A stretch of 64,000 nt of DNA from positions 62,001 through 126,000 of the IMG/VR virus record IMGVR_UViG_3300042147_000020. One strand, given 5' to 3'. The notes under the pieces were generated by a model that had not been told where the DNA came from, did no database searches, and was given only the letters and a program-made list of their open reading frames with translations. The translations under genes and the position numbers were made by a program. The first letter of the stretch is position 1, and every line of letters starts with the position of its first letter. Below are positions 16,191 to 37,640 of the stretch, one piece after another.

Positions 16191-18194
16191 TCAGTTACGA
16201 CCCCAGTTGCCGGTGAACGGCGAGCTGAAGAGGCGGGAGTTCTGCTGGGTAGCGGTGCCGTAGTTGAAGAAGTTGCCCACGTTCTGATTAACAACCAGGT
16301 GGTCCAGAGCGTAACCGCCGCGCTGTACTTGACCTGCGTTGTCATCCAGACCTTTGGCCGGACGGACGTTCAGACCCGACTTCACGATCGCTTCCGACAG
16401 TGCGTCCAAGAACGTGTTGTCGAACGATACGCGACGAGCGAAGCCCTTGATCACGATGTCGCCAGAGATCAGTTGACGCAGGATTGCCTTGCGCTGATCC
16501 AGACGGACTTCCAGTGCGATGTTGGTGTTGCGGTGGGTGTCTTCCCACGCTTCAACCAGCTTCGGATTGGTTTTGCCAGCCAGGTTCAGGATTGCGACGT
16601 AGTCCAGCTCACGCAGGTCACGACGATTGCCTTCGCGATCGTAGTAGTAGCCCAGGTGGATGCGATCCTGATCGTCGTAGCAGACCGGAGCCGCTGCGTT
16701 GAACAGATTCTGGAAGTGACCCATGGTCAGGTTGTTCGCCGCTTGCAGGATTGCCATGCGGGCATCTTCGTTGCCGTTGGCGGCAGCGATGAAGGTTTGG
16801 TGAATCCAGCTCAGCTCACCAGCTTCTTCGATGTCCAGGGTGTAGATCAGCTTTGGAGCGATCAGCATGTTGATCAGTTGGCGCATTTCGTTGTCGCCGA
16901 ATTCGGCGCTACGAGTGTCCAGACGATCAGGCTTGGCTTGCGGATCACCGGTCAGGTTGATTTCGTAGCCCAGTGCGCCCAGGTCTTTCAGGTCAACGTC
17001 GTTGCCTTTACCTTTGTGGGTGCGGAAGGTACCGGACCAGTGCATGTTGCGGTTCAGACCCAGTGCAGTGCTGAGTGCCAACAGTTGCAGTTCCATGGTG
17101 ACGGCGTCAGTCATGGTGTCGATGGTGGTCATGACCAGACGAGGCTGGTACATTTGAGTAGCCATCGGCTGCTGCTGTTGGAACATGTTGCCCATCTGCG
17201 GCGCTTGCTGGAAACCGGCAGCGGCAGGTTGGTACATCAGATCAACGTACGCAGTAACGCGAGTGAGCTGACGGGACTGTTGCAGGCCGAACTGTGCATC
17301 GGTTTGGGTCTGTGCCGACATGCCGACAATGATGTCGCCACGAACTGGCAGGCCGACGATGTTCTCTTCATGTTGACGAGTGAAGTCAACACGAGCGATC
17401 ATTTGGTCGTTAGCACCAACTTCACCCAGGGTGAACGGTTCTTCAACCGAGCCCAGCTTGTTGTCCATGATGGTGTACACCGCCTGAGTGGCGTTGTGCA
17501 ACAGACGGTTGAAGCGGGTTTCGGTGAAGTCTTCGGTTTCGCTGTTGACGATCACGCAGCCGCCGTCGTGAACCAAGGCATTGATGCCGTAGCTGTCGAT
17601 GACGAACTTTTCCAGAACCGACCAGTACGACTTGTGCAGGTAGATGTCACCGGCAACAACGTCGACTTCGACCTGAGCACCGTTCAGGTTCAGGGTCGAG
17701 CTTTCCAGCGGAGAACCCGAGGATTCAATCATCAGGCTGTAGACCGCGATGTGGTTCTGACCGCCGACGGCTTCCTTGTAGCAGACCAGGATCGAGCTGT
17801 AGGTAACTGGGGTAGCGTTGTTGTCCAGAACCAGGAGACGGAAGTCAGCCTTCTGCTGTTCGTTCATGGTTTTGGCGATGCGGTCTTTCAGGCCTTGAAA
17901 GATGACGCTGACGTCTTCACCGGCCATGTTACGGCCAACTGGACGACGGTGGTTGGCGTTGATGTCGAGGACCGAACGGCCACGGCTACCGACGCGAGAA
18001 GAAGGCTGGTTCACGTTTGCACCTGCTTGAGCGAAAGACTGTTGTTGGGATTGTTGAGCTTGTGGTTGAACTTGTGGCTGCTCAGCCTGCGGAGCCGACT
18101 GAGATGCCTGGGGATTCAAACCTGCCGTACGCATGGCATCAGCCATTGCATTGTTCGGAGGAGTTTGTTCGTTACGGTTCTTCTGGACGGCCAT
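16191..18194 (-). CDS. chmA: Chimallin, major nuclear shell protein
   Basis: 667 aa, immediately upstream of beta'-N. Q-rich disordered N-terminus, aromatic C-terminal tail, strongly biased codons, early promoter. Confidence 0.85.
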   Translation of the reverse strand: MAVQKNRNEQTPPNNAMADAMRTAGLNPQASQSAPQAEQPQVQPQAQQSQQQSFAQAGANVNQPSSRVGSRGRSVLDINANHRRPVGRNMAGEDVSVIFQGLKDRIAKTMNEQQKADFRLLVLDNNATPVTYSSILVCYKEAVGGQNHIAVYSLMIESSGSPLESSTLNLNGAQVEVDVVAGDIYLHKSYWSVLEKFVIDSYGINALVHDGGCVIVNSETEDFTETRFNRLLHNATQAVYTIMDNKLGSVEEPFTLGEVGANDQMIARVDFTRQHEENIVGLPVRGDIIVGMSAQTQTDAQFGLQQSRQLTRVTAYVDLMYQPAAAGFQQAPQMGNMFQQQQPMATQMYQPRLVMTTIDTMTDAVTMELQLLALSTALGLNRNMHWSGTFRTHKGKGNDVDLKDLGALGYEINLTGDPQAKPDRLDTRSAEFGDNEMRQLINMLIAPKLIYTLDIEEAGELSWIHQTFIAAANGNEDARMAILQAANNLTMGHFQNLFNAAAPVCYDDQDRIHLGYYYDREGNRRDLRELDYVAILNLAGKTNPKLVEAWEDTHRNTNIALEVRLDQRKAILRQLISGDIVIKGFARRVSFDNTFLDALSEAIVKSGLNVRPAKGLDDNAGQVQRGGYALDHLVVNQNVGNFFNYGTATQQNSRLFSSPFTGNWGRN

Positions 18195-26683: not shown

Positions 26684-26715
26684 GATTCTAACCTTTCTGA
26701 AGGTTTGTTCAATTG

Positions 26716-26733
26716 GATAATATAGGTCTCAAA
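26716..26733 (-). promoter_or_regulatory. Early promoter driving the small-gene array
   Basis: Minus strand TTTGAGACCTATATTATC. Confidence 0.7.
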
Positions 26734-26859
26734 CTAATTAGGATGACCCCTATGCCCTTCTACTCTATACTATCTGGGGTTGGTGTGAACTTATACACGG
26801 AGTCGCTCACAGAGGCTCACAGAGGGCATAAAGCCCCTCACCGGATAACCAGCAAGGGG

Positions 26860-27670
26860 CTCGATGCTTTACACTGCCGTCGGTCGGCTATCTGTGAGTG
26901 GAGTCAGGTCCCCTCTCGGCCAACCTAGTGGGGTCGGAGTAGCCAGGCGTGTTTTCCCACCGAGCGCCCCTGACGGCGACAAGGATTACGGCTAGAACGT
27001 ACGCACCCCTCCAAATGCCCGGCTCGGCTGGTAAAGGTAGGATTCCAATGCGTACGCGATTTACTTAAAGTAAACCCCCTAATGAATTACCCTGTGTCTG
27101 GCCAGACCAAAGGAGCAACACATTAGAGGCTGCACTTTACCAGACGGCTGCCATATAGAGGCTGCGCACCGGTTTGTTACAACTTGAGCCCTTCGCGGGG
27201 GCCCCGTACCTTTTGTCTTACTGGTCGAGTGCGAGTCAACCTATACGACTTCCTGTTATACGTCCGGTTATCCAAGGTTAGGTTGCGGACGCCCCACCCT
27301 TGCCGGGCAGAGATACGTGATCTCCCGCGCTCGCAGGAGACGACGATTTAAGACCCCTGATCCTACCGGCTCTCTGGACAGAGTAGTCACTAGGTTTTGA
27401 CCGTGGTCAGGGGAATTCAAGCTACCCTCTCTCTTAGAGCTGTCTACACTTACACAATGACTCGGGTTAGACCCAAGGTCGTGATTTGGGGTTTGGTCCT
27501 AAAAGTAGTAACCATTCCTACGACAGACAGGGGATTAGCCTGTGAGGGTACAACTTAGGGTGAGTGGGAAAGCCTAAACCTTCCAGACAGTAGTGTGACC
27601 CGACGGGTTGGAGTCACCTGTCCTAGTGGGTAGATAAAGTCCACTTGGCGTTACCGCTACACTCACTTGG
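26860..27670 (-). ncRNA. Candidate large structured non-coding RNA (~800 nt)
   Basis: No credible CDS over ~1 kb. Many hairpins, long-range helices and a crossing helix. Followed by a terminator-like hairpin at ~26825-26870. Confidence 0.6.
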
Positions 27671-27673
27671 GGT

Positions 27674-28184: not shown

Positions 28185-28380
28185 GGGTGCCTTCTCTCTA
28201 CGTCGGGAAGGTTTATGTTCCGTTGCGCAGTACCATGACCTCGTTTGACCGAGAGAAGACATTACTCTTTACCCCATTAGTTCCCCTAGTTCTGATTACC
28301 CTGCGCGTCAGGTCGGTCGTAACTAGGGTAGGCGCGACAATGGCGCCTCGTTTTACTTCTGTTCCCTAAGGAACCTTCTA
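28185..28380 (-). ncRNA. Candidate structured RNA (~190 nt) downstream of a tRNA-like element
   Basis: No credible ORF. Minus-strand helices CCCTAGTT/AACTAGGG, GGCGC/GCGCC and CTGA/TCAG. Confidence 0.35.
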
Positions 28381-28381
28381 A

Positions 28382-28510
28382 TGGGCATCCCCGACAAGCC
28401 TCGAACTTGCGACCTCCAGCGCTCCTCTCGTTAAACCATCTTCACTACTGGAGAGTTAATGATGGAACTTGAGGTTGGACTGGTGCTCTAACCGACTGAG
28501 CTACGGGGAC
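28382..28510 (-). ncRNA. tRNA-like RNA with a 58-nt insert in place of the anticodon loop
   Basis: Acceptor GTCCCCG/CGGGGAT, D arm GCTC/GAGC, T arm GCAAG-TTCGAGG-CTTGT. Stem CCAGT/GCTGG encloses 58 nt. Ends G-CCCA. Confidence 0.8.
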
Positions 28511-28519
28511 GACTACAAA

Positions 28520-28607
28520 TGGCGGAAGAACAGAGATTCGAACTCTGGGGGCTGTTACACCCGACGGTTTTCAAGACCGTTGCCTTAAACCACTCGGCCA
28601 TCCTTCC
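28520..28607 (-). tRNA. trnS: tRNA-Ser(TGA)
   Basis: Cloverleaf with long variable arm, loop CT-TGA-AA, G73-CCA. Confidence 0.95.
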
Positions 28608-28611
28608 AAAA

Positions 28612-28955
28612 CAAGCCTCGATACTATTCCTCGAGGAAGTCACCGTACAGCCAAGGCGTTAGCTGTAATCCATTGGGAACTGAGCAAGAGTCGAATGGAA
28701 CTCGAAGTCAACATGCTCACTCCATCACTTCGGGACGGAGCACTCACCACCTGTCGTGTAGCCAGTGGATTTGTGGTTGGGTGACACCAGGCAGGGCAGG
28801 CGCTCGGTGTTTGGTCTCGTCGCTCGGTACCACCAAGTCATGCTGAGTTGCCACACGAAGCTCTCTTCTGTAGGCTGTAACAATCCCTACTCGAACCTAT
28901 GAGCCTCGGTCTCAGTGCATTGATAAATGCTATCGACAAGATTTGTGGGCTTAAG
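28612..28955 (-). ncRNA. Candidate structured RNA (~340 nt) in the tRNA leader
   Basis: No ORF. End pairing AAGCC/GGCTT and TCGAT/ATCGA. Hairpins TGAGC/GCTCA, TACAGC/GCTGTA and CTCC/GGAG. Confidence 0.4.
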
Positions 28956-29060
28956 CCTTAGCTCGAGCCATTAACTTTAGCAAGCCTTTTGCCAAGGGCT
29001 TGGTCTTCACCATGCGGCGAGGACGGTAGATCTGGAAGCACGGCATCGCTATTCTCCATT

Positions 29061-30777: not shown

Positions 30778-31602
30778 TTAACGACGGTTGTAGTTGATGC
30801 GCTTAACTTCAAGTTCAGCGAACAAGTCCATCGGGTAATCGTCTGGCAGGTGAGCAGCAACTGTAGAGTTGGTGGTCTGCGGGTCGATCACAATGCTGAA
30901 CGGCAGCCGAACGAGGTTGCCCAGTGCACCGTTGATGATGATGTCGCGGTTGATCTTGGTCGCATTGCTGAATCGGGCCGCAACCTCTACACCGTCTTTG
31001 GTAACGATGCGCAGTAACTTGATCGAGTCGATGCTGTCAGTGGAGTCAATCGCTACACCACTGGCTCCGATCAGGCCGAACAGAGACTTGCGATCGCCGT
31101 CCTTCAACGGGAGACGGATCACCGAAGTGTCGCTCACGATGGTAGGTTCGTGTAGGATCTGCCAGTCTTCAGCCAGTTGATCCGATTGTGCCGGAGTCCA
31201 CGGGGTGAATACGTTCTGTGCAGTCTTCATGCCGACCCATGGTGCGAGTGTTGGACACTCGTTCTCACCGGGCTTGTAACCGACAGTTCCACAACCCACG
31301 TCGTAATGACCAGGCTGAACCATTACCAACCACATACCTTGACCATTCCACGAAGGACGCGTAACACGCTTGCCTTGCTTCAGGGCTTCGATGGCTAACC
31401 CGAAGGTCAGAGAATCGCACGGACGGTAGCTGTCCTCGAACACGGCTTTAGGCGACCAAGACTGGTGACCGTTGTCGTATTCCACAAGGTAGCCTTCATC
31501 GGCACCGTTTTCGTCAGCAGGTAACTCCCAGCCTTTGAGTTGGTTGTAGTCCAACCGAGACATCGGAGTTCCGATAACCTTCTTGGTACCAATGTAGTTC
31601 AT
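30778..31602 (-). CDS. tad2: DUF2829 / Tad2-family protein with N- and C-terminal extensions
   Basis: LTFGLAIEALKQGKRVTRPSWNGQGMWL...MKTAQNVFTPWTPAQSDQLAEDW is the DUF2829 signature. Confidence 0.8.
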   Translation of the reverse strand: MNYIGTKKVIGTPMSRLDYNQLKGWELPADENGADEGYLVEYDNGHQSWSPKAVFEDSYRPCDSLTFGLAIEALKQGKRVTRPSWNGQGMWLVMVQPGHYDVGCGTVGYKPGENECPTLAPWVGMKTAQNVFTPWTPAQSDQLAEDWQILHEPTIVSDTSVIRLPLKDGDRKSLFGLIGASGVAIDSTDSIDSIKLLRIVTKDGVEVAARFSNATKINRDIIINGALGNLVRLPFSIVIDPQTTNSTVAAHLPDDYPMDLFAELEVKRINYNRR

Positions 31603-31624: not shown

Positions 31625-31703
31625 GGGTCCCCCTACCGGATTCGAACCGATGCTCGCTACCCACGAAGGGCGGCAGCTCTAACCGACTGAGCTTAAGGGC
31701 GAC
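31625..31703 (-). pseudogene. Degenerate tRNA
   Basis: D arm and T arm (ATCGG-TTCGAAT-CCGGT) intact. G:G mismatch in the acceptor, irregular anticodon arm, no CCA. Confidence 0.6.
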
Positions 31704-32395: not shown

Positions 32396-32530
32396 TTTTT
32401 GAAGTTGACAGGGGAGAAGGGCGGCTCGTTTTATCTCCCGACTTGTACCCATGCACCTTAATGAACCACTGGGCGGCTCCTTTGAGTGCGGTTCGGCTGT
32501 ACCCTACCGTCTGTCAATCAACTTCAAAAA
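32396..32530 (-). ncRNA. Rod-like structured RNA directly after the tRNA-Asp CCA
   Basis: TTTTTGAAG/CTTCAAAAA, TTGACAG/CTGTCAA and AGGG/CCCT stacked helices. Confidence 0.5.
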
Positions 32531-32609: not shown

Positions 32610-32692
32610 AATGAAAAGTCCTGCTGGGCTTGCAGCGAGCTAACGGCGAACCGTTTGGTGCAAGAGCTGATCCAGCAGGGTGTTCTTGAAAT

Positions 32693-33126
32693 TGGCTCTG
32701 GCTTGCTTCCCGTTTGAATCGGGTCACTGAACTCGTTGTACGTAGGTACCCGCCAGACCGGTCGAAGACAAGGCTACTTCCTAAGACATCGCCAAGTCAC
32801 AATCTCGTTATCCTAAGCCACCCCCTAGGCACCTAATTGGATAACGTTACTACGTACGAGTTTGGGTGATCCTCCCGGCGTCTGAACGCCGAGTTAATGC
32901 ACAGTGAGCCGGATTTTCGTAACGCACAAAGGCAAACGACACGGCATGGCAAAGGATCATGTTCTACTCTACTTGCCCGTGGGTTAGAAGTCCTAGACTT
33001 ATTTTCCCTGATCACCGTAGATCAATGACGTAGCTCCGTGGCCTACTCCTTTCTAGGGGAGAGCAAACTTCGCGTTACAGGGTAAAACCATTACGTAGCC
33101 AGCAAGGGTCTCCGCAATGTTAAAAG
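32693..33126 (-). ncRNA. Structured RNA after tRNA-Gln (element B, up to ~430 nt)
   Basis: Shares ordered motifs with element A. Further helices AACTCG/CGAGTT, TACGTAG/CTACGTA, GTTATCC/GGATAAC and CGGCGT/ACGCCG. Confidence 0.5.
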
Positions 33127-33572: not shown

Positions 33573-33730
33573 TGCCCCTTGGTTGGATTCGAACCAACGA
33601 CCCTATCCGTTCAACCGACTCCGTTTAACGGGAGAGTTTAGTTACACCCGCTCAGTCAACTCCACCTTACGGTTCATGTTGCGAATACGAATGCTCTCGG
33701 ACTGTTCTACCAGACTGAACTACAAGAGGC
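33573..33730 (-). ncRNA. tRNA-like RNA with an 88-nt insert in place of the anticodon loop
   Basis: Acceptor CCTCTTG/CAAGGGG with a possible G-1:C73 pair, D arm GTTC/GAAC, T arm GTTGG-TTCGAAT-CCAAC. GTCCG/CGGAT encloses 33610-33697. Confidence 0.8.
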
Positions 33731-33747: not shown

Positions 33748-33848
33748 GGCCCCTAGGATCAGATTCGAACTGATGACCTTCACAGAGACACTACCTCAAT
33801 TCAGTAGGCGTGTCTCTACAGCGCTCTAACCATCTGAGCTACCCAGGG
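33748..33848 (-). ncRNA. tRNA-like RNA with a 42-nt extended anticodon arm
   Basis: Acceptor CCCTGGG/CCTAGGG, D arm GCTC/GAGC, T arm ATCAG-TTCGAAT-CTGAT. Arm AGAGACAC/GTGTCTCT plus CTAC/GTAG. Confidence 0.8.
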
Positions 33849-33856
33849 AGAAACCT

Positions 33857-34009
33857 TTAAAACTCACCACGTTCTGGGCGAGCCTTAGTGGCTGCGATAC
33901 CAACAAAGAACACGACTGCGAATACACCCAGTCCTGCTGTTGGGTTAAACGCTGCCGGAATCGCTGCCGTGATTAGCGCTGGTACAAAAACAAACACTGC
34001 ACGCATCAT
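33857..34009 (-). CDS. 50-aa membrane protein (below the ORF-track cutoff)
   Basis: MMRAVFVFVPALITAAIPAAFNPTAGLGVFAVVFFVGIAATKARPERGEF, GGGAG RBS. Confidence 0.65.
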   Translation of the reverse strand: MMRAVFVFVPALITAAIPAAFNPTAGLGVFAVVFFVGIAATKARPERGEF

Positions 34010-34323: not shown

Positions 34324-34353
34324 CAAAAAAAAAAGGGTTCTCGAAAGAACCCC
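34324..34353 (-). terminator. Intrinsic terminator
   Basis: GGGTTCT-TTCG-AGAACCC followed by T10. Confidence 0.85.
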
Positions 34354-34366
34354 TGAAGGGAGGATG

Positions 34367-36486: not shown

Positions 36487-36678
36487 TCAGCCCAGCCCGA
36501 CACCAGAAGGACGGTTCTCGACCTGATGTTTCGCAGGATCGTAAACTACCTTCTCGTAACAGTTGTGCCAAGGTTTACCCAAACAGCAAGTGCAATGGAA
36601 CGGGGCTGCCACTGGATTGCTCAGGAGTTCAATGACTCCGCACTTGTCGCAAGCGTATTCCAGCAGCGTACCGCTCAT
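36487..36678 (-). CDS. Small Zn-ribbon protein
   Basis: CxxC (CDKC) and CxCC. Start overlaps the phuZ stop. Confidence 0.7.
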   Translation of the reverse strand: MSGTLLEYACDKCGVIELLSNPVAAPFHCTCCLGKPWHNCYEKVVYDPAKHQVENRPSGVGLG

Positions 36679-37640
36679 TACAACACCAGGCCGTCGTCAG
36701 TAGTGGCAGTGTCGCCCACCAGATCGACAGCAGCAGCACGGCCTTCACGACGACGAATGAAGTCGTCCAGAGTCTTCTGGAGTTTCTCGTAAGTAGCATC
36801 GAGATTCTCGGTGGACACTACGAGGTGAACTTCTTTGACGCCTTCGATAGCAGTCGTGAAGTAACCGGTGCACGGATATTCCGGGATCGGCTCTTCGAGA
36901 TGCTTCTGATCACGGTCGCTGTACAACGAAGCGATGGTGATCGGGTCCTTGATGACCTTGACGTCTTCCGGGTTGTAGAAGATGTCCAACATCGCCAGTT
37001 GTGCAGGCACGCTGGTCGAGTGGTTGAAACGCAACCAGTTGGCAACGTCTTTGGTATCCAGCTCGTCGTTCTGACGCGAAGTCAGGTAGCACAGGCTGGA
37101 GATGGCCAGGTTGATTTGACCGTCGACTACCGAACGAGTGCAGTCGCCGCCGTTGTGGCGGTAGTACATGACGATCGGGGTATCGACTTGCTTGGAGATG
37201 GCTGCCAGCGACTTGATGGTGTTCAAGGTGTTCTGTGCAGTGATGGTCGATTCCGAAGAACCAGCCAACAGCACAACTACCGAGTGACCGCGAGCTGCCA
37301 GTTCTTTTGCCAGCAACGGACCGATGACCGAACCCGAACCGCCGGACGCCGAGAAGACCACGATGTTGAAATCTTCGGGGGCTTGCTTCAGCAGGATTTG
37401 CTTGACCGCTGCGGAGATCTGCGCGTGGTTCTCTTTACGCACTTTACCGGAGCCATCAGTTTTGTCGAGGACGTAGATCGAGTCTTCGTTGGTGATACCG
37501 GCCAAGTTGGAACGGCTGGTGTCAATGAAGCTGACCAGAGGGGTCGCGAAGCCAGGAGCTGGCGGACGGTCGATGTAGGCCTTGACGATGTTCGTACCCA
37601 GACCACCACAGCCGTACAGACGCACTTTACCTTGTTCCAT
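36678..37640 (-). CDS. phuZ: PhuZ phage tubulin
   Basis: 320 aa. GCGGLG, tubulin signature SASGGSGS and C-terminal DDGLVL tail. Confidence 0.93.
   Translation of the reverse strand: MEQGKVRLYGCGGLGTNIVKAYIDRPPAPGFATPLVSFIDTSRSNLAGITNEDSIYVLDKTDGSGKVRKENHAQISAAVKQILLKQAPEDFNIVVFSASGGSGSVIGPLLAKELAARGHSVVVLLAGSSESTITAQNTLNTIKSLAAISKQVDTPIVMYYRHNGGDCTRSVVDGQINLAISSLCYLTSRQNDELDTKDVANWLRFNHSTSVPAQLAMLDIFYNPEDVKVIKDPITIASLYSDRDQKHLEEPIPEYPCTGYFTTAIEGVKEVHLVVSTENLDATYEKLQKTLDDFIRRREGRAAAVDLVGDTATTDDGLVL

What the first reader, a model, noticed from the sequence alone, without database searches (positions are those of the whole stretch)
28382..28510. tRNA scaffold carrying a 58-nt hairpin instead of an anticodon loop
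Seen: intact acceptor, D and T arms. The anticodon stem CCAGT/GCTGG closes a 58-nt insert that forms an extended hairpin (CCTC/GAGG, GTT/AAC, CCATC/GATGG). It has no U33-anticodon, ends G-CCCA and is too short for a group I intron. Inference: a natural version of the tRNA-scaffold design. It could protect and display an aptamer or antisense loop, or act as a decoy for anticodon nucleases (PrrC, RloC, PARIS-type) or tRNA-binding proteins.
Basis: partly seen in the sequence, partly recalled or inferred. Interest (0 to 1): 0.85.

Follow-up and report, generated by a model that had tools for sequence, protein, structure and literature searches.

The report
Anticodon-less tRNA-like domain fused to phage RNA
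The tRNA look-alike with a hairpin in place of its anticodon loop is real and cannot decode, but it is the front half of a larger, conserved RNA found almost only in phages, apparently undescribed and of unknown function; the hairpin is a variable, dispensable part.

Summary
On the minus strand, 28387-28510 is a complete tRNA body (Rfam tRNA 45.2 bits) whose 5-bp anticodon stem closes a 58-nt irregular hairpin.

Three points change the interpretation.

1. The "G-CCCA" end is not a CCA tail. It is a 1-nt linker plus the first strand of an 8-bp helix that closes a 113-nt structured domain, which I call X (28273-28385). X has 33 instances: 25 of 31 pairs show compensatory changes, 95.9% of cells are paired, and there is no Rfam family. 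It is phage-specific.

2. In 23 of 33 cases by a strict test (about 29 by eye), X sits directly behind the T arm and acceptor strand of a tRNA-like element. The anticodon arm of that element ranges from a 5-bp stem with a triloop to more than 70 nt.

3. Four orthologues keep the long hairpin, with 14 of 37 pairs compensatory. The relative whose neighbouring nuclease is closest has only a 9-bp stem capped by UUCG, and the hairpin tip differs between orthologues.

The hairpin is therefore a lineage-specific expansion, not a conserved aptamer or antisense loop. No excision gives a shared anticodon, so it is not an intron.

Most likely the tRNA-like domain is an RNase P processing and stability handle for X. 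The function of X is unknown.

The parts
28504..28510 (-). Acceptor-stem 5' strand (GTCCCCG) of the tRNA-like domain. It starts 9 nt after the CCA of tRNA-Ser(UGA).
   Evidence: Compensatory changes with 28387-28393 in the orthologues.
28485..28501 (-). D arm (GCTC / AGTCGGTTA / GAGC) with G18 and G19.
   Evidence: The D-stem pair changes from C-G to U-A in orthologues.
28479..28483 (-). 5' strand (CCAGT) of the stem that stands in for the anticodon stem.
   Evidence: It pairs with 28416-28420, with compensatory changes in the orthologues.
28421..28478 (-). 58-nt insert forming an irregular rod: CCTC/GAGG, GTT/AAC, a UUU bulge, CCATC/GATGG, then a 20-nt apical part (28441-28460) that can fold into a small CUCC-capped hairpin. 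It is a lineage-specific expansion of a hypervariable arm.
   Evidence: It is absent from the orthologue L199, and the tip is replaced in L194 and L211. It is not a repeated element.
28416..28420 (-). 3' strand (GCTGG) of the anticodon-stem equivalent.
28411..28415 (-). Variable loop AGGTC. It has G46, and C48 opposite G15.
   Evidence: Invariant in all the orthologues.
28394..28410 (-). T arm (GCAAG / TTCGAGG / CTTGT).
28387..28393 (-). Acceptor-stem 3' strand (CGGGGAT).
28386..28386 (-). One-base linker (G) between the acceptor stem and helix P1 of domain X. Across the family the linker is 1-4 nt and ends in G.
28273..28385 (-). Domain X, a 113-nt conserved structured RNA. It has a closing helix P1 (CCCATTAG/CTAATGGG), hairpin P2, hairpin P3 (GAGGCG...CGCCTA), long-range helix P4 and hairpin P5 (CCTG-ACGCG-CAGG). 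The single-stranded blocks AGAAsTAAAAC, ACGnnCGAC and GGTAATCAG are nearly invariant.
   Evidence: Model R1 scores 121.9 bits here. There are 33 family members with strong covariation. No Rfam family matches.
28520..28607 (-). Canonical tRNA-Ser(UGA) with an encoded CCA, immediately upstream. The order tRNA-Ser, then the tRNA-like domain, then X is kept in the orthologues.

Best explanation
The element is the 5' domain of a two-part phage non-coding RNA. A complete tRNA body (acceptor, D and T arms, variable loop) is joined through a single G to a 113-nt conserved structured domain X.

The RNA lies in the phage's tRNA operon, 9 nt behind tRNA-Ser(UGA). I infer that it is transcribed with the tRNAs and that host RNase P cuts at its 5' side, because everything RNase P reads (the acceptor/T-arm stack and the elbow) is intact.

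It cannot decode. Where a 7-nt anticodon loop should be there is a closed helix, here grown into a 58-nt rod. Across the family this arm is free to vary from a triloop to more than 70 nt, so the rod is a tolerated expansion. Compensatory changes keep it helical so that it does not disturb the tRNA fold. It is not the functional cargo.

Its 3' end is not a free NCCA, because it runs straight into helix P1 of X. The most likely role of the tRNA-like domain is therefore a processing and stability handle: it gives a defined 5' end buried in a very stable fold, and possibly a grip for tRNA-binding factors. X would carry the conserved activity.

Shown: the anatomy, conservation and covariation, the fusion to X, the variability of the arm, and the lack of any shared anticodon. 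Inferred: co-transcription, RNase P cleavage, that the two domains stay on one molecule, and the handle role. What X does is unknown.
For: 1. The tRNA body is intact: Rfam tRNA 45.2 bits against a gathering score of 29.
2. Five orthologues occupy the same slot after tRNA-Ser(UGA). The four that carry the rod show 14 of 37 compensatory pairs, in the acceptor, D, anticodon-equivalent and rod helices.
3. X is a real structured family. It has 33 matches of 52.8-125.5 bits, with 95.9% of cells paired against 31-47% when the partners are slid, 25 of 31 pairs changed on both sides, and 0 of 500 shuffles as good.
4. Helix P1 of X uses the supposed CCCA tail, and its partner strand changes to match in other phages.
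5. In 23 of 33 cases by a strict test, X is directly preceded by a T arm, a 7-nt acceptor strand and a 1-4-nt linker. About six more have a degenerate T arm (by eye).
6. The stretch between the D and T stems is 19, 23, 24, 28, 29, 47, 50 or 72-79 nt in different phages. L199, whose neighbouring SNase gene is the closest to the window's among the relatives retrieved (88% identical, against 75-79% for two rod-bearing phages), has only a 9-bp stem with UUCG.
7. In the Vibrio phage copy a plain hairpin stands in front of X in place of the tRNA-like domain. This fits a generic role as a structured 5' end.
8. There is a precedent: the tRNA-like module of Mycobacterium smegmatis YrlA is cut by RNase P, and its authors proposed that the fold protects the RNA (PMC4201824).
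Against: There is no expression or end-mapping data for any member. So it is not known whether the two domains stay on one molecule, or whether a 3' endonuclease separates them and CCA is then added.

Not every anticodon-less tRNA look-alike in these phages is followed by X. Two others in this window (33575-33729, 33751-33848) and those in L126, L127, L130, L131 and L134 are not. Such look-alikes may therefore have a function of their own.

Within the four rod-bearing phages, the CCAYC/GRTGG helix and its UUU bulge are conserved. That could be a binding site and not just structure.

A handle role does not explain why a full D arm and variable loop are kept. RNase P needs less than that.
Confidence: 0.5

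Rival explanations
1. Stand-alone tRNA mimic. A 3' endonuclease cuts between the linker and X, CCA is added, and the anticodon-less tRNA-shaped RNA acts by itself. It might titrate a tRNA-binding host factor, for example a defence nuclease or sensor that reads the tRNA body. In this reading X is a separate RNA that merely uses the neighbouring tRNA-like gene for its own 5' end.
For: The same cluster and its relatives hold several other anticodon-less tRNA look-alikes with no X behind them. This suggests that such molecules are useful in their own right. The full tRNA core, including the D arm, G18-G19, the variable loop and the Levitt pair, is kept. A Tad2-like anti-defence gene sits in the same island. 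RNase P-cleaved M. smegmatis YrlA receives CCA in vivo (PMC4201824).
Against: No free single-stranded trailer follows the acceptor stem. Helix P1 begins after 1-4 nt. An encoded CCA is absent or not conserved, whereas all seven canonical tRNAs of the cluster (every ARAGORN call except the odd Arg-like one) encode theirs. The tight, conserved junction (linker ending in G, P1 starting with C in 29 of 32 distinct sequences) looks like a built unit. No target is known.
Confidence: 0.22
2. One reading: a natural tRNA scaffold whose purpose is to protect and display the 58-nt hairpin, as an aptamer, an antisense loop or a protein-binding rod.
For: The rod is kept as a helix by compensatory changes in four phages. 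The CCAYC/GRTGG helix, the UUU bulge and the GYT/ARC helix are conserved among them. The 20-nt apical sequence is identical in two phages whose lower stems differ.
Against: The relative with the most similar neighbouring nuclease has no rod. The tip is a different capped hairpin in two others. Across the wider family this arm has any length. The window holds no near-full-length (within 3 mismatches) complement of the loop and the insert has no similarity in E. coli genomes.
Confidence: 0.08
3. An intron-containing tRNA gene. The insert is spliced out, for example by an endonuclease plus an RtcB-type ligase, to give a normal decoding tRNA.
For: The insert sits exactly where tRNA introns sit and extends the anticodon stem. 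The exon-like parts are more conserved than the insert. Phage Psa21 has an RtcB gene near its tRNA cluster.
Against: No single excision leaves a loop with U33 in the window copy. The best candidates in the orthologues give different anticodons (GGA or AGA, GUU, GAA), even though two of those orthologues have identical exons. There is no 3-4-3 bulge-helix-bulge, and the central helix is 4, 5, 3 or fused in the four copies. At 58 nt it is far too short for a group I intron, and no ribozyme family matches. The orthologue L199 has no insert and still no anticodon loop. The 3' end is paired into X.
Confidence: 0.03
4. A dead tRNA gene, disrupted by an insertion and decaying.
For: Standard tRNA finders do not call it. 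There is no anticodon.
Against: Compensatory changes occur in every helix across four phages. The same architecture recurs in unrelated phages. The insert is not a multi-copy element.
Confidence: 0.03
5. A Y-RNA-like (YrlA-type) partner of a Ro60/Rsr protein, with the long helix as the Rsr-binding stem.
For: YrlA RNAs also combine a tRNA-like module with a long helix. The scaffold is about 90% identical over 35 nt to the D-arm side of an unannotated YrlA-like element in Erwinia phages.
Against: The module here is not permuted. The GNCGAAN0-1G motif is absent. The ORFs scanned within 4 kb carry no TROVE domain (SNase, PL7 lyase, Tad2-like and others with no Pfam match). The Rfam YrlA score over this region is 17.4 bits against a gathering score of 69, and that alignment is the known tandem-tRNA artefact (PMC4201824).
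Confidence: 0.03

Closest known systems
YrlA / bacterial Y-RNA-like RNAs (Rfam RF02553; Chen et al. 2014, PMC4201824)
   Same: A non-coding RNA that embeds a tRNA-like module (acceptor, D and T arms) beside a non-tRNA functional part. The module is recognised by tRNA enzymes, and in M. smegmatis it is cut by RNase P. The authors proposed that the fold stabilises the RNA.
   Different: In YrlA the module is circularly permuted: the acceptor is closed by a loop and the RNA ends lie at the long helix. YrlA carries a GNCGAAN0-1G motif and lies within 4 kb of an Rsr gene. Here the module is in the normal order, the motif and Rsr are absent, and the partner domain (X) is unrelated.
Phage T4 stable RNAs C and D (species 1 and 2; rnaC, rnaD)
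   Same: Small stable RNAs encoded inside a phage tRNA cluster, next to tRNA genes, of unknown function (PMC3014915, PMC9697503). RNA C has a tRNA-type T arm with paired ends.
   Different: No sequence or model similarity was seen. Rfam gives only a 17.5-bit tRNA-Sec-like hit for rnaC, and model R1 did not match the T4 locus at E <= 0.1. The T4 RNAs lack a full tRNA body and lack X.
Engineered tRNA scaffolds for recombinant RNA (Ponchon and Dardel design; from my own knowledge)
   Same: The same topology: a foreign hairpin inserted in place of the anticodon loop of an otherwise intact tRNA, so that the cell processes and stabilises it like a tRNA.
   Different: In the design the insert is the payload and the CCA end is free. 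Here the insert is dispensable and variable, the conserved payload is fused to the 3' end, and there is no free CCA.
tmRNA, and tRNA-like processing signals such as mascRNA at the MALAT1 3' end (from my own knowledge)
   Same: A tRNA-like domain joined to a non-tRNA domain. RNase P recognition of the tRNA-like part defines an RNA end.
   Different: tmRNA splits its tRNA-like domain between the two RNA ends, is charged with alanine through G3-U70 and carries a tag reading frame. None of these is present, and ARAGORN finds no tmRNA. mascRNA lies 3' of its partner and is released.
Intron-containing tRNA genes (archaeal and eukaryotic bulge-helix-bulge introns; bacterial group I introns in anticodon loops)
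   Same: Extra sequence at the anticodon loop that extends the anticodon stem.
   Different: There is no bulge-helix-bulge, no group I core, and no conserved mature anticodon. The IMG/VR tRNA-Ile(UAU) genes with introns recovered (several on GVMAG giant-virus contigs) show what real ones look like: an intact CUUAUA loop start before the insert.

Membership tests
Canonical decoding tRNA | 7-bp acceptor stem, D arm with G18-G19, T arm with a TTCRA loop, and a variable loop | tested here: met
   Rfam tRNA 45.2 bits against a gathering score of 29. The arms were read directly.
Canonical decoding tRNA | 5-bp anticodon stem closing a 7-nt loop with U33 and a purine at position 37 | tested here: not met
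   The loop is replaced by 58 nt. No excision restores U33 in the window copy.
Canonical decoding tRNA | Single-stranded discriminator plus CCA at the 3' end (encoded in the seven canonical tRNAs of this cluster) | tested here: not met
   CCCA is the 5' strand of helix P1 of X, and it becomes CACA or CUCA in orthologues. Whether CCA is added after a cut cannot be tested here.
tRNA gene with a group I intron | Intron of roughly 200 nt or more with the conserved group I core | tested here: not met
   The insert is 58 nt. There is no Intron_gpI or other ribozyme match at E <= 10.
tRNA gene with a bulge-helix-bulge intron | Two 3-nt bulges separated by a 4-bp helix at the exon-intron borders, and the same mature anticodon in orthologues | tested here: not met
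   The internal loops are 4x3 and 2x2. The central helix is 4, 5 or 3 bp, or merged, in the four copies. The possible anticodons differ.
YrlA / Y-RNA-like | Permuted tRNA-like module (T arm, closed acceptor, D arm) | tested here: not met
   The order here is acceptor 5' strand, D arm, long arm, T arm, acceptor 3' strand. The Rfam YrlA hit of 17.4 bits spans the T arm of tRNA-Ser and the D arm of this element.
YrlA / Y-RNA-like | GNCGAAN0-1G motif near the 5' end | tested here: not met
   The motif was looked for by eye in the sequence and not found. Its definition comes from PMC4201824.
YrlA / Y-RNA-like | Ro60/Rsr (TROVE) gene within about 4 kb on the same strand | tested here: not met
   The flanking ORFs scanned are SNase, PL7 lyase, Tad2-like and ORFs with no Pfam match; small ORFs were not scanned. 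The rest of the 239-kb genome was not examined.
tmRNA | G3-U70 alanine identity, a tag reading frame, detection by ARAGORN | tested here: not met
   ARAGORN reports no tmRNA. The acceptor pairs are G1-U72, U2-A71 and C3-G70.
tRNA-like plus X bipartite phage RNA (family defined here) | Domain X with helices P1-P5 and the conserved blocks TAAAACGRGGCG and GGTAATCAG | tested here: met
   Model R1 scores 121.9 bits, E = 3.6e-35, at 28273-28385. The window sequence was one of the ten used to build the model.
tRNA-like plus X bipartite phage RNA (family defined here) | T arm and 7-nt acceptor strand directly 5' of P1, with a linker of 1-4 nt | tested here: met
   Window: T arm, then CGGGGAT, then G, then P1. 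The same holds in 23 of 33 members by the strict test.
tRNA-like plus X bipartite phage RNA (family defined here) | Both domains present on one mature RNA molecule | not testable with these tools
   This needs RNA end mapping in an infected host.

The most novel reading that the evidence does not exclude
The tRNA-like plus X unit is a phage-specific functional RNA of a kind not yet described. It could be a ribozyme, a ligand-binding RNA or a protein sponge that uses a tRNA body to enter or block host tRNA-handling machinery. One possibility is an RNA-based counter-defence element sitting in a tRNA and anti-defence island. The hypervariable anticodon-position arm might then be a lineage-specific specificity or evasion module.
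Probability: 0.15. Interest if true: 0.85.

Novelty: new variant of a known kind. Interest (0 to 1): 0.62.

Why it matters
Phage tRNA clusters are usually read as codon-usage or anti-defence supplements, and odd entries in them are ignored or annotated as 'tRNA-OTHER'.

This case shows that at least one such entry is the front half of a well-conserved, covariation-supported RNA family. The family is spread over unrelated phages: Pseudomonas nucleus-forming jumbo phages, roughly 45-kb phages of Vibrio and of unknown hosts, and a 455-kb contig. It is essentially absent from cellular genomes and has no Rfam entry.

The family offers:
- a concrete, testable example of nature using a tRNA fold as a chassis for another RNA;
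- a 110-nt domain with nearly invariant unpaired blocks, which is how ribozymes and ligand-binding RNAs typically look;
- two cultivable models (Psa21 and D6 on Pseudomonas syringae).

It also gives an annotation rule: an 'intron-like' insert in a phage tRNA gene does not imply splicing.

Tried and rejected
- **Antisense target of the apical loop.** Only the gene itself matches within 3 mismatches in the window. An exact-match scan of IMG/VR gave two phages and one chance hit inside a coding region.
- **Mimicry of a host RNA.** The insert has no match in E. coli genomes. The likely host is Pseudomonas, and no Pseudomonas collection was available.
- **Multi-copy palindromic element.** The insert has no second copy in the window or in about 200 loci.
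- **Known RNA families.** Rfam 15 finds nothing beyond tRNA for the element, and nothing for X, at E <= 10.
- **Metagenome scan with a scaffold pattern.** No hits.
- **Bacterial genome scan with the X pattern.** One true hit on a phage-like MAG contig and two chance hits in coding sequence.
- **A protein partner encoded next to X.** All-against-all comparison of ORFs within 5 kb of 33 copies found no family shared between the phage groups.
- **Neighbouring ORFs.** Ten have no Pfam match.
- **His-like identity from the CCCA end.** Dropped once CCCA proved to be part of P1. However, other look-alikes in L130, L131 and L134 do have G-1, C73 and CCA.
- **Parent tRNA of the scaffold.** No clear assignment. 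The best similarities are generic (Asp, Val, Thr, Ile, Arg, His).
- **Literature.** Eight full-text searches found no description of this element.
- **Promoter and terminator scan.** It was uninformative, apart from a strong terminator at 34333-34354 that ends the upstream unit.
- **Failed call.** One repeat finder failed on a strand argument and was not repeated.

Full report
**Where the window comes from.** The window matches IMG/VR contig IMGVR_UViG_3300042147_000020 (238.8 kb) at 99-100% protein identity. It encodes a chimallin-type nuclear shell protein (16191-18194), a PhuZ-type tubulin (36678-37640), split multisubunit RNA polymerase subunits and a phiKZ gp29-like protein. It is therefore a nucleus-forming jumbo phage. 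No cultured phage is close: chimallin is at most 31% identical. A PL7 lyase gene inside the tRNA cluster is 67% identical to that of Pseudomonas phage Psa21, which points to a Pseudomonas-type host.

**The tRNA cluster.** The region from 28.3 to 33.9 kb on the minus strand holds eight ARAGORN tRNAs. The seven canonical ones all encode CCA.

**The observation.** Read on the minus strand, 28510 to 28387 is a complete tRNA body. Rfam's tRNA model gives 45.2 bits (gathering score 29) with 57 unaligned bases in the anticodon loop. Standard ARAGORN skips it. With introns allowed, ARAGORN calls it but has to accept a loop without U33.

**Orthologues.** Four related contigs carry an element in the same slot, directly after tRNA-Ser(UGA) and a short spacer. 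They are L200 (the same contig as L123 and L191), L194, L211 and L199.
- Three of them keep a long rod. Aligned with the window copy, 14 of 37 predicted pairs show changes on both sides that keep the pair. These fall in the acceptor, D, anticodon-equivalent, rod and T helices.
- The middle of the rod is conserved: the GYT/ARC helix, a UUU bulge, and the CCAYC/GRTGG helix.
- The lower helix has a different sequence in each copy.
- The 20-nt apical part is identical only in L200. In L194 it is a GCTAC-TTCG-GTAGC hairpin, and in L211 it is another small hairpin.
- L199 comes from the phage whose neighbouring SNase gene is the closest to the window's among the relatives retrieved (88% identical, against 75-79% for two rod-bearing phages). 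It has no rod, only a 9-bp stem capped by UUCG.

The rod is thus maintained as a helix where it exists, but it is gained, lost and re-tipped over short evolutionary distances.

**Not an intron.** I enumerated every single excision that would leave a 17-nt stem-loop.
- The window copy never gets U33.
- The best options in the orthologues imply different anticodons, even though L200 and L194 have identical 'exons'.
- There is no 3-4-3 bulge-helix-bulge.
- 58 nt is far below the size of a group I intron.
- No ribozyme family matches.
- L199 has no insert and still no anticodon loop.

**The 3' end and domain X.** The about 110 nt downstream of the element are strongly conserved. They match unannotated DNA in Psa21 and Pseudomonas phage D6, but also in unrelated phages of about 47 kb: TPWB-08 and three Vibrio phages. 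Aligning ten copies gave a consensus with five helices, and 19 of 31 pairs were compensatory.

A covariance model built from that alignment (R1) finds one copy in the window at 28273-28385 (121.9 bits). It finds 33 copies over the loci I had fetched. On that alignment:
- 95.9% of cells pair, against 31-47% when the partners are slid;
- 25 of 31 pairs change on both sides;
- none of 500 shuffles reaches any observed measure.

That alignment was fitted to the model, so it leans towards the structure. The independent MAFFT alignment agrees with it.

The closing helix P1 is CCCATTAG/CTAATGGG in the window. In L199 P1 is CACATTAG/CTAATGTG, in Psa21 CTCAACAG/CTGTTGAG, and in TPWB-08 CACCGGAG/CTCCGGTG. 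So the element has no conserved CCA, and its acceptor stem is separated from X by a single G.

**A general architecture.** An IMG/VR scan for two invariant blocks of X returned 30 contigs of 4.5 to 455 kb. In 23 of the 33 X copies, a strict test finds a T arm, a 7-nt acceptor strand and a 1-4-nt linker ending in G directly in front of P1. About six more have a degenerate T arm, including Psa21. D6 annotates its copy as 'tRNA-OTHER'.

Where a full tRNA-like model could be fitted, the stretch between the D and T stems is 19 nt (a 5-bp stem with a triloop), 23, 24, 28, 29, 47, 50 or 72-79 nt. The anticodon-position arm is therefore a hypervariable region of a family, and the 58-nt rod is one of its states.

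In one Vibrio phage a plain hairpin takes the place of the tRNA-like domain.

X is essentially absent from one genome per species of 185,579 prokaryotic species. There is one true hit, on a phage-like MAG contig, and two chance hits in coding sequence. No Rfam 15 family matches X. Eight literature searches found no description of it.

**How it most likely works.**
- Shown: an intact tRNA core; no decoding loop; a 3' end paired into a conserved domain; a variable arm; a position inside a tRNA operon.
- Inferred: the unit is co-transcribed with the tRNAs, RNase P cuts at +1 of the acceptor stem, and the tRNA fold then serves as a stable, defined 5' end for X.

This parallels what was proposed for the tRNA-like module of YrlA, which RNase P cuts in M. 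smegmatis (PMC4201824).

The main rival is that the tRNA-like part is released and acts alone as a tRNA mimic. I cannot exclude it, because the same cluster and its relatives hold several anticodon-less look-alikes with no X behind them.

The activity of X is unknown. Its nearly invariant unpaired blocks are typical of catalytic or ligand- or protein-binding RNAs. No protein family is shared by the neighbourhoods of X across phage groups.

**Comparison with known classes.**
- It works most like YrlA-type RNAs and like engineered tRNA scaffolds.
- It is not a YrlA member: it is not permuted, it has no GNCGAA motif, and the ORFs scanned within 4 kb show no TROVE domain.
- It is not a tmRNA, not an intron-bearing tRNA and not a canonical tRNA.
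- T4 RNAs C and D are the classical case of unexplained stable RNAs in a phage tRNA cluster (PMC3014915 and PMC9697503). They show no detectable relationship to this element.

**Verdict.** The feature is real and was correctly described, but it was interpreted around the wrong part. It is a new variant of a known kind: a tRNA-like module built into a non-coding RNA. It belongs to an apparently undescribed, phage-specific bipartite RNA family whose conserved business end lies just outside the reported coordinates.

Noticed in passing
window 33751-33848 (-): A second anticodon-less tRNA look-alike ('B'). It has an intact acceptor, D and T arms and a long perfect arm ending in a GAATTGA loop. Look-alikes in L126 (7193-7279; same acceptor sequence as B) and L130 (5876-5963) have different stems but also end in loops containing the palindrome AATT. 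That loop could allow loop-loop dimerisation. No X follows it.
   Followed up: partly
window 33575-33729 (-): A third look-alike ('C'). It has an 8-bp acceptor stem and 88 nt between the strands of the GTCCG/CGGAT stem, folding into several hairpins. ARAGORN with introns forces a Gln(TTG) call without U33.
   Followed up: partly
window 31625-31702 (-): ARAGORN calls this 'tRNA-Arg(TCG)', but it scores only 25 bits in Rfam. It has a G-G mismatch in the acceptor stem, no CCA, and an arm that reads better as a 7-bp stem with a TTCGT loop. It is probably another non-decoding look-alike.
   Followed up: no
window about 32420-32530 (-), after tRNA-Asp; Psa21 locus L190 about 2170-2300: Another conserved non-coding block. 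It is closed by TTGACAG/CTGTCAA, contains GGGTACAAGTC, and ends in ATAAAACGAGCCGCC. It is shared by eye between the window and Psa21, and in both it lies just downstream of a tRNA-Asp (in Psa21 a tRNA-Pro intervenes). It is distinct from X, and Rfam finds nothing.
   Followed up: partly
window 26684-27673 (-): About 1 kb downstream of the SNase gene has no ORF of 60 aa or more on the gene strand (only a 51-aa one). It looks structured, and no Rfam family matches. Similar long non-coding gaps lie at 28608-29060 and 32610-33125.
   Followed up: no
window 30778-31602 (-): A 274-aa protein with a Tad2-like (Thoeris anti-defence 2) domain (Pfam PF11195, E = 7.5e-23) is encoded in the middle of the tRNA cluster. 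The cluster may double as an anti-defence island.
   Followed up: no
L130 6683-6833, L131 6683-6857, L134 2551-2728: tRNA look-alikes whose anticodon position holds a second, circularly permuted tRNA-like module (T arm, closed acceptor hairpin, D arm). The result is two tRNA bodies joined head to head. The outer acceptor ends have G-1, C73 and CCA, like tRNA-His.
   Followed up: partly
L130 7017-7142, L131 7448-7572, L134 2912-3037, L074, L048: A recurrent insert type that begins with a T-arm-like hairpin (ACAACGGTTCGAnTCCGT) inside the anticodon position of phage tRNA look-alikes from unrelated contigs.
   Followed up: no
L001 1466-1529 (Erwinia phage Deimos-Minion, KU886225 about 168726-168789): An unannotated YrlA-like permuted tRNA module (Rfam YrlA 44.5 bits, below the gathering score of 69). 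The same 34-35-nt D-arm match recurs in about 15 Agricanvirus-type Erwinia phage records (the module itself was only inspected in Deimos-Minion). Its D- and T-arm sequences closely resemble the window element's scaffold.
   Followed up: partly
L129 2056-2141; L133/L190 2771-2858 (Psa21): tRNA-Asn(GTT) genes of 86-88 nt with a long, class-II-like variable arm. This is unusual for Asn.
   Followed up: no
L129 1096-1205 and 1687-1796: One jumbo-phage contig carries two tRNA-like plus X units about 600 nt apart. The second one has a CCCGATAG/CTATCGGG P1 helix.
   Followed up: partly
L231 5043-5120 (MAG contig JALOAT010000029): A CTA-anticodon (amber suppressor) tRNA lies 2.3 kb from a tRNA-like plus X unit. 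The X copy is the same type as on the 455-kb IMG/VR contig (L223). This suggests a stop-codon-recoded large phage.
   Followed up: no
window 33857-34009 (-): A 50-aa hydrophobic small ORF sits at the head of the tRNA operon, just after the strong terminator at 34333-34354.
   Followed up: no
L002-L121: Most of the 120 or more IMG/VR hits for a D arm and T arm separated by 55-85 nt appear, by eye, to be tRNA-Ile(UAU) genes with an intron after an intact CUUAUA loop start, several on GVMAG giant-virus contigs. They make a useful contrast set for real tRNA introns.
   Followed up: partly
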